This document shows positions 1,000 through 62,380 of a DNA stretch of 64,000 bases, piece by piece. The DNA is from Dicyema japonicum. Its lineage: Eukaryota > Animalia > Dicyemida. Under the pieces are notes generated by a model. That model did not search any database. It was given only the letters and a program-made list of their open reading frames with translations, and was not told the DNA's origin. A program made the position numbers and the translations under genes. The DNA lies in the NCBI GenBank assembly GCA_011109175.1, contig RDEW01000001.1:476678-540677 (forward strand), in the 5' to 3' direction. Position 1 is the stretch's first letter. Each line of letters begins with the position of its first letter.

Positions 1000-1405
1000 G
1001 AAGACTATTGGGCACAATCTGAGAATGAAGTTGACATCCTCATCGAGGTAGGCCAAGAATGACTCTGCGGTCGTCGTCATACAAAAGGACTTGATAACCT
1101 TTAAAAAAAAATTGAAAACCGCGATTTTAGCGGAAAAGTCGATATTCGGAGTCTTCACAAAATCCCTGGAATCCACCCAACCATTAATTAGCTTAGTGAC
1201 TTCCTCAATTGCCTTCTTCCATACACTATCGAAATATCTACAATCATACAGAAATTTTGAGCCGATGCCACGTCCAATGAGAAGAGCTGTTCAGGATTCT
1301 CGACCCCGCCGAACTCGTCCTTTCCTTTGTCGTCTGGATCACTTAGTTAGTTGAGAACTTTTTATTTCTGTCTCTTTGACCCAGTGATCCTGGAGGTAAT
1401 AATGA
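1000..1405 (+). mobile_element. 3' fragment of Ingi/Vingi-like LINE
   Basis: PRPMRRAV resembles PRPIRKCVG in the 10.5 kb copy. Ends GGATCACTTAG, then the family 3' UTR TTTGACCCAGTGATCCTGGAGG and a TAATAAT tail. Confidence 0.65.
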
Positions 1406-1505: not shown

Positions 1506-1568
1506 TGGCGTCATGTGGTTCACCTTTTGTGGTGGCGCTCAGTGTAATAATACACCAAAAAGAACCAT
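1506..1568 (+). ncRNA. Putative HDV-like ribozyme (degenerate) at LINE 5' end
   Basis: P1 TGGCGTC/GGCGCTC (first pair mismatched), P2 GTGGTTC/GAACCAT, P3 ACC/GGT, L3 TTTTGT, P4 GTGT/ACAC, candidate catalytic C at 1556. Folded by eye. Confidence 0.55.
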
Positions 1569-26300: not shown

Positions 26301-26786
26301 TATTATTTTACAAAAATATTTAGATTTAATTATTTTACAAGATTAAGTGTAATATTGTATTAAAGTTAGTTAAATCGGATTAATGCGTACTATTTGTTCT
26401 AATTACATTGATTACGTCAAACCAATGATGAATTCTTTTATCGATTAATAATGAAACTATAAGAAAATTAACTCTTTTTAGCAGCACCGAATATACCCCA
26501 TGAACTTAAATACGCCTCTAATGTTCAAGTAATGTCTTAAGGGATTCATAAACTTGACCACCAAATCTAAAATCAAATTTTCATTTTTGGATTAACAAAT
26601 TTTTGGAATTCAGCATATTTCTTAGACGAGTAAGCCAAGTGGGTAATTATTAGAATATTGAGGTGTGACGTACATCATTTCTTTTGTTTTTATTTTTTCG
26701 TAGGTAACGTCAGAAATATTGTAGAAACCTTATTCAGGGGATGAAAATATGTAAAATTGTAAGATTATTGAAAATTAGTAAAATGG

Positions 26787-27116
26787 CAACACAGAAAACG
26801 TCACCCTGACCGAACACAGTAAGGATTGGCAGATTAATAACTTTTTCTTTATACTGTGGGTACAGGCTCCGTTGTTGGTTGGTGGAGTGATCTCTCTGGT
26901 TAATTCCGATAACGGACGAGACTAAACCTACCTACTAGTTGTTCAACTTCTTAGAGAGATCAGTGTTTAAAACACTTGAATGTGAGCAATAACAGGTCTG
27001 TGATTGCCCTTTGACGTTCGGGGCTGCACGCAGCTAAGAAAGCATTAGATGTCTTGTTTGGAAAAGTAAGCTAAACCTTAAAATTTTTTTGTGACGGGAA
27101 TCAAGGCTTGTAATTT
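26787..27116 (+). pseudogene. 18S rRNA: 18S rRNA 3'-region fragment (isolated, degenerate)
   Basis: Universal motifs TTGGTGGAGTGAT..CTGGTTAATTCCGATAAC.GACGAGAC, AACTTCTTAGAG, GAGCAATAACAGGTCTGTGAT, GGGGCTGCACGC. Several substitutions; no 5' part. Confidence 0.85.
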
Positions 27117-27339
27117 CACGCGACTTGTTGTGGTATTGAAAAAGATTAACTCTACGTAATCCTTCTGAACAAATATATGAGTTAATTTCAAACGTGACAC
27201 ACGAAGACTTCTGATCAGGATTCCCAAAGATGGCCGTTTATCTGTCGCGAACTGTCTATACGAGTGTATTGAAGGGCAGTCTCTTCGGCCGACTCTAAGG
27301 ATTGGGTAAGATTATTTTACTTCGCTCCAAACACAAAAT

Positions 27340-41364: not shown

Positions 41365-41425
41365 TTATTATTACCCCCAAGATCACTGGGTCAAAGAGAA
41401 AGAAATTACAGAAAGTAAGGAATTT
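41365..41425 (-). mobile_element. Isolated Ingi/Vingi-like 3' end
   Basis: Reverse complement TTTCTTTCTCTTTGACCCAGTGATCTTGGGGGTAATAATAATAAT. Confidence 0.7.
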
Positions 41426-41543
41426 TCTGTAAATAATAGTTAATTTAAATTTATTAATTAAAATAAGAAAATAATAAAAATTAAAATTTTATTATGGTTA
41501 ACCTAAATTTAATAGAGAGACATACATGCTATTGACGTTAGCA

Positions 41544-57849: not shown

Positions 57850-59460
57850 TAAAAGCACTTTTACAGAACCAAAGAACGTTATATTAACAAAGGTCCCGTT
57901 TGTGCCACACGTTTCAAACTCTACTTTACTAGGCGTCTCTATTGCCCTCTGCTTTGCGCATCTGTCCTTAGATCTTCTAGGTCTTCTGCAGATTTAAGTT
58001 TTCTTCCAATTCCATTAAGATCCTGATTTGTTCTCATTGTTAAAGTAATTGTCCATTATTATATTTGCAGGGGCGTTTATGTCTATTCTAAGCACGTGCC
58101 CTAACATTCTCCATCTTGATTTAATAATGTCGATGCTTATTGGCTTCGATTGTGCCACAGGGTATAATTTCTTATTTGAAATATTCTTGGGACAACCTAG
58201 GTCCGTTAAATTGCGTAATTGTTTTCGATGAAATATATCCATTTTCTTGATCTCCAGCTCTGTGACTCCCCATTTACCAGAGTTGTACATAAGCACCAGC
58301 TTTATATATGCGTTGTATAGTCTTATTCTTAGATTTGTTTTTATTATCTTTCGTCGACTCCATATCTTCTGCATTTTCTTATACATGGCAGTGGCTAGAA
58401 CTATTCTATACATCATGTCCTCACTATCACCAAATAAGGATCCTAGTTTCCATTTTTCCTCGATTTTTCATCAATATATTTTAATTCCCTTGTGATTCTT
58501 ATGTGTTCAGTCTTTTCCAGATTAACTCGGAGACCAATTCTTAAATACTCCAGGGATTTTCTTTAAAGCAAGTCCAAGCTCCAGATCATTTTCTGACACA
58601 AAATCTATGTCATCTGCATATATAATCTCCATCTGCATGCATCCTTCACATTTTGTTATAAGAGCTCTCAATGCCGCTTCCAGGTATACGACGAATAGAA
58701 CTGGAGATAGAGAGTCTCCCTGAGGTATTCCAACTGTTGTCCCGAAGGGCTTCGATGTGGTGTTCCTAACTCGTAAATTTAATTCAGTGTTAGATAATAG
58801 GAAACGGACAAGTCTTGTGTTATCCTTATCAAGAAAACTTCCAGCAACGTCCAAAAATGTTTTTCTGTTGACAGTGTCAAACTCACTGGACATGCCCACT
58901 TCCAAAATCTTAAAATCACTCCTGTATCGTTGAAACATGGCACATATCCACATGTGGGACCAAGCGAGTATCATTATTTTTACATGGTTCCATTCTCAGC
59001 CGCAATTTTTGTTTAATTAATAATGATCCAATTTCGTGATCGAAGACCCCTTTAAATCCTGCCGGCCTTTTTTCCCCAAGCACGTCGAAACTTGCCTTCT
59101 TTATTTCATCAACAGTAGCATTCCAAATCATCTCTGGGGGATTTTCTATATTTATGTTAACAATCTCCTTAATTGCCATACAATAATCTTCACGCGTCTT
59201 CTCACATAAGCATAATTTTTCCACAACTAAACGATCCAGATAAGCTCTATTCTTTCTAGCTCCATCTATTCCGAACTATCTTTTCATTCTGAAACGTATC
59301 GAAGGTTCTCAAAAATTTTAATGTTCTCAGGGCAATTATTGCAAAGACCCCGTAGCCAGTAGAAGAGGATTTGAACCTAAATAATTGTAATTCCTAATGT
59401 CCATGCACAGTGGAAATCCTAAAACTGTGGATCTATCCATCATAAGGTGGTTGTGTAAAA
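57850..59460 (-). mobile_element. RTE-like LINE with internal deletion
   Basis: GIPQGDSLSPVLF, IYADD, RIRLYNAYIK, RWRMLGHVLR, LKSAEDLEDLR. Linker and APE remnant upstream. Confidence 0.85.
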
Positions 59461-59488: not shown

Positions 59489-60167
59489 TTAAAAGAAATA
59501 TTTATTTTTTCTTGCAAATTTAAATGTAAAATAATGCACATTTATGACATCTCCCCTACAATCCATAAGGAATGATGCAGTTTCCCCTTTAATTTTGAAC
59601 CTCCACGCTAAGCCAAGGAGACTTCTCTTTTCAGCAAACTGAACCTTTTCGAGGGGTATGATGAATGTGTTGAATTTTCGAATAGGAAATATGGTTTCTA
59701 TTTGTACGTGGTCATCTGGTAACTTGTATATTGACTTGACGACTCTAAACTGTGCAAATACAGCGACAGCCACCGAAATCCATCCTAAAAGGTTACATTG
59801 ATGTCTTACCGAGGGCATATAAGGGGGTAGAAATAAAATAAGAATCTAACTTCACAAATACTTCAGCCAAAGCAAAGTAAAGCATCCCAAAACCTCCCTG
59901 AACGGGACTGTACCAATATCGGATGAATTTATTACGGAGGTTATAAATTGGCATTTTCATGTTTGATTTTCTCCATGAATGTGTGCTTTGTACTAAGCTA
60001 CGACCAATCAAATACTTAGACAAACCAAAACCTCCCTGAACGGGACTGTACCAATATCGGATGAATTTATTACGGAGGTTATAAATTGGCATTTTCATGT
60101 TTGATTTTCTCCATGAATGTGTGCTTTGTACTAAGCTACGACCAATCAAATACTTAGACAAACACAT
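59489..60167 (-). CDS. TMEM223: TMEM223-like mitochondrial membrane protein; one 25-nt intron (59785-59809); in-frame 138-bp duplication at the N-terminus
   Basis: Two hydrophobic segments, then V.IET..P...F.IPLEKV and FKIKG...FLMD..G...N..YF, matching the TMEM223 C-terminal pattern as I recall it. Confidence 0.65.
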
Positions 60168-60244
60168 TATTATTTTAATTGTTATTAATTTTTCTTAATT
60201 ATATTAATTTTATTAAAATAATATTGCCAAATTGTATTAACTCC

Positions 60245-60320
60245 CTTGTCGGTCTGGGATTACTTAGTTGAGAACCTTTTATTTCTTTCTCTTTGACCCA
60301 GTGATCCTGGAGGTAATAAT
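60245..60320 (+). mobile_element. Isolated Ingi/Vingi-like 3' end
   Basis: Near-identical to 1335-1403 (GGAT.ACTTAG...TTTGACCCAGTGATCCTGGAGGTAATAAT). Confidence 0.8.
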
Positions 60321-60428
60321 TAACTCAAGGAGGCTTTTAACTTTGTTTTGAGGAATATTATCACACACAAAATATATTTGTTGAACATTGACGCAAACCT
60401 GAAATTATAGTTGGGAAACTTCTTAAGA

Positions 60429-60501
60429 AATTTTCGATGTGGTTCACCTTCACGTGGAGAAAATTGGGTACCAGTATCAAACTGGCAACTAAAAGAACCA
60501 C
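60429..60501 (+). ncRNA. HDV-like self-cleaving ribozyme fold at LINE 5' end
   Basis: P1 AATTTTC/GAAAATT, J1/2 GAT, P2 GTGGTTC/GAACCAC, P3 ACC/GGA (one mismatch), L3 TTCACGT, P1.1 GG (60466-67), P4 CCAGT/ACTGG, J4/2 with CTAA (C60489). Confidence 0.75.
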
Positions 60502-62380
60502 TACTATTCCCCTGTCAACCTTTTCAACGACCTCTGGGAAGTCGGACTGGATGATGGCGGCTATTGAGCGGGCGCGTAGCTTTCGCTCCCAAAGATCGGA
60601 TTGGCTACTTTTAATCCTAGCTGGGACATCGAACAGAACCCCGGGCCCCATAAAAACGGGAAATTCCTTAATATCATGTAATTCAACATACGGCCTCACA
60701 AATCAAATGAAATTTTTGCATTTTTAACTTTCCACAAAATTGATTTCGCCATGCTACAGGAAACGAAACTATCAAAAAAGTCAGTGCTTCCACACTACAA
60801 AGACTACTCAATTGTCCGCCGTAATCTACCAAATTCAAACAGGGGAAACGGTGTTCTCATACTCATACACTAATCTATTCCATTCTCCGATACTTCCTCT
60901 CTGACACTAGCTCTGTTTGAAGATGACGATCACATTGAACTTACTTCTGTCTTGGTGTAAATAAACCACACAAGGTACACATTTGTAAATATTTACATCC
61001 CACCACCAAGTCTCAGTATGAAACATTACTCCTAAAAACTAACCGAATTACAAAAGATTGAAAATGTGATAATCTGCGGAGATCTAAATGCAAAAGATCC
61101 TCTCTGGCTAATCGGCCAAAAGAGTAATGAGAGGGGTTTTCAGATCCTCTCTCAACTAGAACAATTAGTTATCCTCAATGACAGGAAATCACACACTCGA
61201 ACAGCTTCCAGACCTGGAGACTCTAATACATCACCCGACCTCACACTATGTTCTCCATCACTATCTTCGGCGATATCTTGGAGAATTGTATATGACCTCG
61301 GACTATAATCCAATTCTACTGTCAATCAAACTACTCTCGCCTATTGTTAGGCATCAGAAAACTATAACGAATTACAAACGTACAAAATGGGATTCATTCA
61401 GAGAAGAAACAGAAAAATTTCTATCCGACTTTTCCGTTGAGAATTTCAAATCGCTCGACGCCGCAAAGAAATTTTTTAATGAGGTCATCCTCAGTGCCGA
61501 CAAGAAATACATTTCAAGAAGACTCATTGCAGACTATAATCCAACCTTAATAACGAAATTACATAATTAATCAACAAGAGGAAATTGACCGTTGGAACAA
61601 TTTCATCACAAAAATTAACCACCGAACAAAACTAAAGGATTTTTGGAGCACTTTACGTGGAATTCAGTCGAAACAAAATAGAATGGAGACAACCCACGCC
61701 ACCAGTATTGACAAGAATCAAACACCACGTGATTTCACTCATCAGGTAGATATCATAATGGACCACTACGCAAAAGTGAGTCACATAGATATGACCAAAT
61801 GCTCTCGTCCGTGCAAATTGAAAAACGTTCAAACTCCTCAAGGAAAACCGATTGAAATCAGTACGTCGGATGTCCAAAAACTCTCCTGACAAAGAGCTTG
61901 ATGGAATCTGTATTTAAAGCACCTGGGAATGCAAGGACTCAAAGCAACAACAGACATAATTTCTGTGTCCATCAACACCTACAGAATTTCTGCACTATGA
62001 AAAAAATCCAAAATAATCCCAATCCTGAAGCCCAAGAAAGATCCTTCGGAACCGGGATTTTTCAGACCAATTTCACTACTATCTGTAGTATCGAAGATTG
62101 TTGAACGTGTTGTACTGAAACTAATATCGAAGTATCTTCCCTTCCCTGATTTTCAACATGGCTTTCGTCCATAATACTCAATCTGGAGAGTTCCAGCCAC
62201 CATTGCCACTTGAGGCCATGATATGAATGAACTATAGAACGCGCCAGTCACTCGACCGATACGTGCTTGTGTGGGGTCGAAGGAGGAGCATCGGGCCAAG
62301 ATGAGGTCCCTGCTAGAGCGTGCTGGAATCACGTGATTAGTTAGTTTGTGCAACCATGGTCTCTGGTGTTGTTATTATTA
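60429..62380 (+). mobile_element. Ingi/Vingi-like LINE with 5' ribozyme and 2A; most of RT deleted
   Basis: LILAG-DIEQNPGP (1-nt deletion), APE (QETKL, GDLNAK, SPDLTL), QHGFRP, then a jump to RPIRACVG...LLERAGIT*. Confidence 0.9.

What the first reader, a model, noticed from the sequence alone, without database searches (positions are those of the whole stretch)
60429..60501. Well-formed HDV-like nested double pseudoknot (73 nt)
All elements appear in canonical order: P1 (7 bp), J1/2, P2 (7 bp), P3, a 7-nt L3 UUCACGU (similar to the UCAACGU/UCCUCGU loops I recall for L1Tc and R2 ribozymes), P1', GG for P1.1, a 5-bp P4, CUAA with the candidate catalytic C, and P2'. Deviations: an A.A pair closing P3, A1-U instead of G1.U, and two extra A in J4/2.
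Basis: partly seen in the sequence, partly recalled or inferred. Interest (0 to 1): 0.85.

Follow-up and report, generated by a model that had tools for sequence, protein, structure and literature searches.

The report
HDV-like ribozyme heading a 2A LINE
The 73-base fold is real and sits at the first base of a decayed jumping gene (a LINE with a 2A "StopGo" leader) in an octopus-like genome, so it is most likely a self-cutting HDV-type RNA that trims the element's transcript, which is a known kind of device in a new host and element group.

Summary

The fold alone is weak evidence. A descriptor loosened enough to accept it hits about 15 times in this window. Context and comparison carry the case:
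- The fold lies on the sense strand at the 5' end of a degraded APE-type LINE. The AUG sits in J1/2, followed by a 2A leader, the AP endonuclease and the start of the RT.
- Contigs from public runs break away from the window exactly at 60428/60429, with unlike flanks.
- The only other 2A LINE in the window (1507-1568) carries the same fold, with a G.U first pair and a perfect P3.
- Distant 2A LINEs on three metagenome contigs carry it too. P1 and P2 differ completely in sequence but stay complementary, and L3 stays near-constant (UUCACGC, UCUACGC, UUCCCGU).
- In one of them, P1 starts directly after a (TA)19 microsatellite.
- L3 here (UUCACGU) is identical to that of the CPEB3 ribozyme.

Cleavage itself is untested. 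This subfamily has an A.A at the base of P3, an A-U first pair and a long J4/2, so its activity is uncertain.

Verdict: a new member of a known kind. First-stage notes flag the same architecture in other windows of this genome; those notes are unchecked.

The parts
60429..60435 (+). P1 5' strand. The predicted cleavage site is immediately 5' of A60429.
   Evidence: 7 bp with 60459-60465. Contigs break from the window at 60428/60429.
60436..60438 (+). J1/2 (GAU). The AUG at 60437-60439 spans J1/2 and the first base of P2.
   Evidence: ORF 60437-60727 begins MWFTFTW. MWFTF is also the start of the Octopus sinensis relative P0002.
60439..60445 (+). P2 5' strand
   Evidence: 7 bp with 60495-60501. 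In about 78% of read depth 60502 is A, which would add a U60438-A pair.
60446..60458 (+). P3 (ACC/GGA, i.e. A.A plus 2 C-G) closing L3 UUCACGU
   Evidence: L3 is identical to the CPEB3 ribozyme loop (GTTCACGTCGCGGCC in PMC10274809). Relatives have ACC/GGU, GCC/GGU and GCC/GGC.
60459..60467 (+). P1 3' strand (60459-65), then GG (60466-67), the 3' strand of P1.1 pairing with U60450 and C60451
60471..60485 (+). P4 hairpin CCAGU-AUCAA-ACUGG
   Evidence: The same position holds unrelated hairpins in the 1507 copy and in L001.
60486..60494 (+). J4/2 CAACUAAAA with candidate catalytic C60489
   Evidence: The C-(U/A)AAAA run before P2' is kept in the 1507 copy and L001.
60495..60501 (+). P2 3' strand
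60437..60648 (+). Leader ORF ending in a 2A motif (WLLLILAG / DIEQNPGP). In this copy the two halves are one base out of frame at the G-run 60623-60625.
   Evidence: About 30-58% of read depth from other copies has one more G there.
60661..61320 (+). AP-endonuclease domain of the LINE, with in-frame stops and a frame change
   Evidence: The 90-aa piece at 61036-61305 finds APE-RT LINE proteins, the best at 50% identity in Octopus sinensis.
61990..62172 (+). Start of the reverse-transcriptase domain. LINE-like coding translation ends near 62180, so the copy looks 3'-truncated or interrupted.
   Evidence: …RPISLLSVVSKIVERVV…HGFRP
1507..1568 (+). Second, diverged copy of the fold. P1 GGCGUC/GGCGCU (G.U first pair), P2 GUGGUUC/GAACCAU, P3 ACC/GGU, L3 UUUUGU, P4 GUGUA-AUAA-UACAC, C-AAAAA.
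   Evidence: It is followed by the 2A motif ILLLSGDIEQNPGP at about 1647-1688 and an APE.
60224..60320 (+). 3' end of a very abundant repeat with a (TAA)n tail, about 108 nt upstream. It is not part of the ribozyme.
   Evidence: Depth rises to about 1.1 million towards 60320, and 63 contigs leave the window there into AAT repeats. The same tail lies about 105 nt upstream of the 1507 copy.

Best explanation
60429-60501 is the 5'-terminal HDV-like ribozyme of a single-ORF, APE-type LINE that carries an N-terminal 2A (StopGo) leader.

Shown:
- the fold itself;
- its place at the exact 5' boundary of the repeat;
- its recurrence, with compensating P1 and P2 changes, in a second copy and in distant 2A LINEs.

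Inferred mechanism:
- The element is transcribed as part of a longer read-through transcript.
- The RNA folds into the nested double pseudoknot, and C60489 in J4/2 cuts the chain 5' of A60429.
- This leaves an uncapped 5'-OH element RNA whose first base is the first base of P1, and that RNA is the template for new copies.
- Translation then begins inside or just after the ribozyme. Here the AUG lies in J1/2, so P2-P3-L3 encode MWFTF.
- The 2A motif releases this structure-dictated leader peptide from the APE-RT protein.

This particular copy is dead. Its leader and 2A are out of frame, the APE has stops and the RT is cut off. At most it could still self-cleave if transcribed.
For: 1. Context. 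The fold is on the sense strand, 8 nt before the AUG and about 195 nt before DIEQNPGP, and is followed by APE and RT.
2. Boundary. In run X2, 10 contigs align from 60429 onward with unlike sequence before it. Contig pieces in X1 start at 60428/60429. One contig joins 60320 to 60429 through 9 other bases.
3. Recurrence in the window. The window has only two NPGP motifs, and both are preceded by the fold.
4. Distant relatives. L002 (136-216), L005 (235-335) and L009 (39-113) are 2A LINEs found through APE homology. They have L3 UUCACGC, UCUACGC and UUCCCGU, and wholly different but complementary P1 and P2.
5. Enrichment. Four of the 7 strict-descriptor hits in 427 kb lie within 300 nt upstream of a 2A motif. 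That search space is about 1.5% of the total.
6. L009. P1 starts directly after (TA)19, and the frame is open without an AUG from nt 40 to the 2A motif.
7. Conservation. Between the 1507 element and the O. sinensis element L001, blastn aligns only the ribozyme region (107 nt, 75%). P4 differs in sequence there but stays a hairpin.
8. Variants. Those listed among copies fall in J1/4 and P4. None is listed in P1, P2, P3, L3 or J4/2.
9. Precedent. HDV-like ribozymes process R2, Dong, R4 and L1Tc RNAs at their 5' ends, and an active R2 ribozyme carries a P3 mismatch (PMC3774820, PMC3185411, PMC4908430).
Against: - No cleavage data exist.
- The A.A sits at the base of P3 next to P2, a region PMC4908430 counts as part of the catalytic core.
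- The first pair is A-U, not G.U.
- The candidate C is 5 nt from P2', not 3.
- P1 is six A-U pairs plus one G-C.
- A nested alternative fold is about as stable as the pseudoknot.
- Rfam HDV and CPEB3 models find none of these sequences.
- Pairing in the descriptor-found relatives is perfect by construction, and the L3 rule was set post hoc.
- L001 lacks the L3 G and its first P1 pair.
- L003, L007 and L027 show no fold.
- Only 40 of 84 variant sites were listed by read laying.
- Whether the public runs are DNA or RNA is not recorded.
Confidence: 0.74

Rival explanations
1. The fold descends from an HDV-like ribozyme, but in this subfamily it no longer cleaves. Under this reading it serves another 5'-end role, such as internal promoter, translation start or RNP binding, as argued for Pr77 of L1Tc. 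The boundary at 60429 would then be a transcription start.
For: The A.A in the P2-P3 base, the A-U first pair and the long J4/2. No variant at the A.A pair was listed among copies. The AUG and the first five codons lie inside the fold. L1Tc's first 77 nt act as both promoter and ribozyme (PMC3383444).
Against: L3 and P1.1 are fully canonical. An active R2 ribozyme tolerates a P3 mismatch (PMC3774820). P1 begins exactly at the repeat boundary here and at the microsatellite edge in L009, which is what cleavage predicts.
Confidence: 0.19
2. The fold is a chance match of a permissive descriptor. Under this reading the conserved stretch ATGTGGTTCACC…AGAACCA reflects only the coding of the leader peptide (MWFTF…KRT).
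For: The loose descriptor hits about 15 times in the window and 226 times in 427 kb. Within the octopus copies both P2 strands are sequence-conserved, so they show no covariation.
Against: In L002, L005 and L009 the fold lies upstream of any AUG or in an AUG-less frame, with different P1 and P2 sequences. The enrichment upstream of 2A motifs, the exact boundary and a leader that finds no protein homologues beyond one all argue against chance.
Confidence: 0.07

Closest known systems
L1TcRz / Pr77 of Trypanosoma cruzi L1Tc (ingi clade)
   Same: An HDV-like ribozyme occupies the first roughly 75 nt of a single-ORF APE-type LINE whose ORF carries an N-terminal 2A. The cleavage site is the element's first nucleotide. 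P1.1 is weak, at 1-2 bp (PMC3185411, PMC3383444, PMC3708506).
   Different: The host here is an animal (octopus-like). Promoter activity was not examined. The AUG lies inside J1/2. The clade of this LINE is unresolved: no RT tree was made, and RNase H appears only in some distant relatives.
R2 / R4 / Dong 5' ribozymes
   Same: They process a co-transcript at the 5' junction. P1 is 6-7 bp, P4 is variable, J1/4 is 0-2 nt, and mismatches are tolerated. Dong sits in (TAA)n repeats (PMC3774820), and the elements here sit beside (TAA)n and (TA)n repeats.
   Different: Those elements use a restriction-like endonuclease and fixed targets. This element is APE-type and has a 2A leader.
CPEB3 ribozyme (mammals)
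   Same: The L3 sequence UUCACGU is identical, P1.1 is weak and the fold is compact at about 70 nt.
   Different: CPEB3 is intronic and single-copy, with a G.U first pair, a 3-bp G-C P3 and a 4-nt J4/2. The Rfam CPEB3 model gives no hit here.
2A-bearing APE-type LINEs of metazoa (Odon et al. 2013, PMC3708506)
   Same: A GD(V/I)ExNPGP motif in the N-terminal part of a single long ORF. Molluscs are among the hosts, and some relatives have a PHD finger between the 2A motif and the APE.
   Different: That paper does not mention ribozymes (0 occurrences). The link between the 2A leader and a 5' HDV-like fold in animal LINEs is the added observation.

Membership tests
HDV-like self-cleaving ribozymes | Nested double pseudoknot in the order P1, J1/2, P2, P3, L3, P3', P1', P1.1, P4, J4/2, P2' | tested here: met
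HDV-like self-cleaving ribozymes | P1 of 6-7 bp whose first nucleotide is the cleavage site | tested here: met
   7 Watson-Crick pairs. The repeat boundary is at 60428/9.
HDV-like self-cleaving ribozymes | G.U wobble as the first pair of P1 | tested here: not met
   A60429-U60465 here. It is G.U in the 1507 copy and U-A, C-G and G-C in L002, L005 and L009. This pair is therefore not conserved in this group.
HDV-like self-cleaving ribozymes | 3-bp P3 | tested here: inconclusive
   Two C-G pairs plus A.A. Relatives have 3 bp. An active R2 ribozyme with a P3 mismatch is on record (PMC3774820).
HDV-like self-cleaving ribozymes | L3 with a 5' U and a G near its 3' end (reverse wobble), plus pyrimidines that form P1.1 | tested here: met
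   UUCACGU is identical to the CPEB3 L3. P1.1 is C60451-G60466 and U60450.G60467.
HDV-like self-cleaving ribozymes | Catalytic C in J4/2 a few nucleotides before P2' | tested here: inconclusive
   C60489 is followed by UAAAA, so 5 nt rather than 3. The C-(U/A)AAAA run is kept in the octopus copies. L002 and L005 have C-AAAC, and L009 has C-GAC.
HDV-like self-cleaving ribozymes | Helices supported by compensating changes in relatives | tested here: met
   15 of 17 helix positions change on both sides across 6 sequences. Pairing is by construction for the descriptor-found rows. Independent support comes from the enrichment upstream of 2A motifs.
HDV-like self-cleaving ribozymes | Mg-dependent self-cleavage yielding 5'-OH and 2',3'-cyclic phosphate ends | not testable with these tools
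   No assay was possible. The kind of the public runs is unknown, and they are contigs only.
HDV-like self-cleaving ribozymes | Match to Rfam HDV-type covariance models | tested here: not met
   No hit at E of 10 or below for this site or for L002, L005 and L009. These models miss the retrotransposon members found here, so the result is weak evidence.
2A-bearing APE-type non-LTR retrotransposons | D(V/I)ExNPGP in the N-terminal region of an ORF that encodes APE and RT | tested here: met
   DIEQNPGP at 60625-60648, then APE and the start of RT. In this copy it is out of frame with the AUG.
L1Tc/ingi clade | RT phylogeny and a C-terminal RNase H domain | not tested
   The copy is cut within the RT. 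RNase H is seen only in some distant relatives. No reference RT set was available.

The most novel reading that the evidence does not exclude
The pairing of ribozyme and 2A may be a functional module rather than a coincidence. The ribozyme must occupy the extreme 5' end. Translation starts inside it or right after it, on an uncapped 5'-OH RNA, from an AUG in J1/2 or with no AUG at all. The first residues are therefore dictated by RNA structure, and the 2A motif exists to shed that peptide from the APE-RT protein. The same layout in trypanosome L1Tc, in octopus LINEs and in unidentified metagenome eukaryotes would then point to an old, widespread expression strategy for promoter-less LINEs.
Probability: 0.3. 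Interest if true: 0.7.

Novelty: new member of a known kind. Interest (0 to 1): 0.5.

Why it matters
HDV-like ribozymes at LINE 5' ends have been known since 2010-2011, so the class is not new. Three things are added here:
- A well-supported cephalopod-type example.
- Evidence that animal 2A LINEs, described in 2013 without any mention of ribozymes, commonly start with such a fold, as L1Tc does.
- A case of dual coding, where P2-P3-L3 also encode the first five residues of the leader peptide.

This gives a testable reason for 2A leaders in single-ORF LINEs, and a set of natural variants (A-U first pair, P3 mismatch, long J4/2) for probing what the HDV fold tolerates.

Tried and rejected
- Rfam, at gathering and E-value thresholds, on the site and on the relatives gave no HDV or CPEB3 hit. 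Only weak unrelated matches appeared (ceN89, RAGATH-32, and AT-repeat artefacts).
- The leader ORF finds no homologues. P0002, whether residues 1-130 or whole, finds almost nothing more. More octopus 5' ends could therefore not be fetched.
- The first alignment given to the search for related loci was too diverse. A 3-sequence alignment worked.
- P0037 has no contig on record.
- L003, L007 and L027 are 2A-bearing but show no acceptable fold. L006 has the core GCC-UUCACG-GGU with imperfect P1 and P2. L004 is degenerate, with no L3 G and no intact 2A.
- An apparent P1.1 covariation between the 1507 copy and L001 was dropped. It uses non-canonical L3 positions, and L001 lacks the L3 G.
- Similarity upstream of P1 between copies is not significant (p = 0.06-0.48).
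- The MAFFT alignment of the six ribozymes was not structurally consistent. Pair counts were therefore made in a script instead of with the count of structure pairs, and no covariance model was built.
- The Ruminski 2011 and Webb 2009 papers are not held.
- The organism's name stays coded. "Octopus-like" rests on the nearest relatives being in O. sinensis.

Full report
**Observation.**
- P1 is AAUUUUC/GAAAAUU, 7 bp.
- J1/2 is GAU.
- P2 is GUGGUUC/GAACCAC, 7 bp.
- P3 is ACC/GGA, which gives an A.A and two C-G pairs.
- L3 is UUCACGU.
- GG after P1' can pair with U60450 and C60451 to form P1.1.
- P4 is CCAGU/ACUGG.
- J4/2 is CAACUAAAA, with C60489 five bases before P2'.

ViennaRNA prefers a nested alternative (-18.3 kcal/mol, z = -2.2). 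The pseudoknot's nested halves score -6.6 and -14.1 kcal/mol, so the two folds are of similar stability. Rfam finds no HDV-type family here.

**Chance.** A descriptor loosened enough to accept this site hits about 15 times on the two strands of the window and 226 times in 427 kb of window plus fetched loci. The fold alone therefore proves little. A stricter rule requires a 7-nt L3 of the form U-Y-Y-N-C-G-Y, P1 of at least 6 bp, P2 of at least 5 bp and at most one P3 mismatch. It gives 7 hits in 427 kb, against 0.75 per 214 kb in shuffles. That rule was written after seeing the hits. It does follow the known loop: the mouse CPEB3 ribozyme contains GTTCACGTCGCGGCC (PMC10274809), so its L3 is the same UUCACGU.

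**Context.** The fold heads a degraded non-LTR retrotransposon on the + strand.
- An AUG at 60437 spans J1/2 and P2 and opens a frame reading MWFTFTW… up to WLLLILAG.
- One base out of frame follows DIEQNPGP (60625-60648), a 2A/StopGo motif.
- Then come an AP-endonuclease domain with stops and a frame change, and the first RT motifs. LINE-like coding translation ends near 62180.
- About 30-58% of read depth from other copies carries one more G in the G-run at 60623-60625, so the frame break is particular to some copies.
- 2A leaders in single-ORF APE-type LINEs of animals, molluscs included, are described in PMC3708506. That paper never mentions ribozymes.

**Boundary.** Logan contigs of four public runs were laid on 60200-60900. 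Three runs are from one sample of organism A and one is from organism B.
- 60224-60320 is the 3' end of a hugely abundant repeat with a (TAA)n tail.
- 60331-60424 is a separate repeat. In organism B it continues into other sequence after 60424.
- From about 60440, depth rises to 100-150 thousand.
- The only well-supported break between 60320 and 60897 is at 60429. Ten contigs of X2 align from 60429 onward, each with unlike sequence before it (agreement 0.51).
- Three listed pieces of X1 start at 60428/60429.
- One contig joins 60320 to 60429 through AATAATGTT.

The repeat's first base is therefore the first base of P1. [quoted passage not shown]

The listed variants inside the fold are 60468 (J1/4) and 60481 (base of P4). 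The change at 60502 would lengthen P2. None is listed in P1, P2, P3, L3 or J4/2, although only 40 of 84 variant sites were shown.

**Relatives.** A 90-aa APE piece was searched against 1.8 billion representative proteins and found 133 LINE proteins. The best two come from Octopus sinensis.
- One of them, P0002, starts MWFTFSGG… and has a 2A motif. Its locus L001 shows the same core, with a C.C first pair and no G in L3.
- The exact 12-mer ATGTGGTTCACC occurs a second time in the window at 1513.
- There, 1507-1568 folds as P1 GGCGUC/GGCGCU (G.U first pair), P2 GUGGUUC/GAACCAU, P3 ACC/GGU, L3 UUUUGU, P4 GUGUA-AUAA-UACAC and C-AAAAA. It is followed by ILLLSGDIEQNPGP and an APE.
- These are the only two NPGP motifs in the window.
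- Between the 1507 element and L001, blastn aligns only 107 nt, which is the ribozyme region. P4 differs in sequence but remains a hairpin.

**Distant relatives.** Contigs encoding other 2A-bearing hits, plus 45 metagenome loci found through APE homology, gave three more folds within 300 nt upstream of a 2A motif on the sense strand.
- L002 136-216: P1 UUGGACC/GGUCCGA, P2 UCCUGCC/GGCAGGA, P3 ACC/GGU, L3 UUCACGC.
- L005 235-335: P1 CGGUUG/CAACCG, P2 UGCUGUC/GACAGCA, P3 GCC/GGU, L3 UCUACGC.
- L009 39-113: P1 GAUUUC/GAAAUC, P2 GAGGA/UCUUC, P3 GCC/GGC, L3 UUCCCGU.

Four of the seven strict hits fall in the roughly 1.5% of sequence that lies upstream of a 2A motif. In L009, P1 begins directly after (TA)19, and the frame is open without an AUG from nt 40 to the 2A motif.

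Across the six sequences, 15 of 17 helix positions change on both sides. Because the descriptor demands pairing, the weight lies on where the hits fall, not on the pairing itself. L003, L007 and L027 show no fold, and L006 and L004 are imperfect.

**Mechanism.** The best reading (0.74) is a ribozyme that frees the element's RNA from a longer transcript at A60429, as in R2, Dong, R4 and L1Tc (PMC3774820, PMC3185411). Translation would begin in or just after the fold, and the 2A motif would release the leader peptide. Cleavage, the catalytic role of C60489 and the translation step are all inferred.

The doubts concern this subfamily:
- The A.A lies at the base of P3 next to P2, which PMC4908430 counts as part of the catalytic core.
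- The first pair is A-U.
- J4/2 is two bases longer than usual.
- P1 is A-U rich.

An active R2 ribozyme with a 4-bp P1, a P3 mismatch and odd L3 spacing is on record (PMC3774820), and L1TcRz works with a one-pair P1.1 (PMC3185411). The deviations are therefore not disqualifying.

The rivals are a fold that is kept but no longer cleaves (0.19) and chance plus coding constraint (0.07).

**Comparison and novelty.** It works like L1TcRz and the R2-type ribozymes. On membership:
- Topology, P1, L3, P1.1, covariation and 5'-terminal position are met.
- P3 and J4/2 are inconclusive.
- The G.U first pair and Rfam matches are not met.
- Catalysis cannot be tested here.

It is a new member of a known kind. 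The added points are the link between 2A leaders and HDV-like folds in animal LINEs, and the AUG with its first five codons lying inside the ribozyme.

First-stage notes report the same architecture in several other windows of this genome. They are unchecked, were not used as evidence, and only show that the scan met this before.

Noticed in passing
60224-60320 (+), about 1290-1402 (+), 41368-41450 (-): This is the 3' end of a very abundant repeat ending …TTTGACCCAGTGATCCTGGAGGTAATAA(TAA)n, with depth climbing to about 1.1 million towards the tail. Two of the three copies lie about 105 nt upstream of the only two 2A-LINE 5' ends. One public contig joins the tail to 60429 with 9 filler bases. 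This suggests insertion next to (TAA)n tails, or template switching at the 5' end.
   Followed up: partly
60425-60492: Contigs of runs X1 and X7 show a joint that goes back 68 bases (60492 to 60425). Some copies therefore carry the ribozyme unit in tandem.
   Followed up: no
60331-60424: This is a separate repeat between the (TAA)n tail and the ribozyme. A contig of organism B carries it at about 85% identity and then continues into other sequence at 60424. It could be a preferred target or an unrelated repeat.
   Followed up: partly
L009:1-345: In this metagenome 2A LINE the reading frame is open from the second base of the element through the ribozyme to the 2A motif, with no in-frame AUG. 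The element abuts a (TA)19 microsatellite.
   Followed up: partly
26778-27172 (+): A partial eukaryotic 18S rRNA match (model positions 1178-1606, 146 bits) sits in the middle of a repeat-rich region. It is an rDNA fragment or pseudogene.
   Followed up: no
58015-59224 (-) and 59887-60162 (+): A reverse-transcriptase fragment of another LINE lies on the opposite strand (…YADDIDFVSE…). A 138-nt unit is repeated twice in tandem just upstream of the finding.
   Followed up: no
P0010, P0059, P0025, P0071, P0101 (relatives): Several related LINE proteins carry a cysteine-rich, PHD-like finger between the 2A motif and the APE. Odon et al. described this for some CR1 and Crack elements.
   Followed up: no
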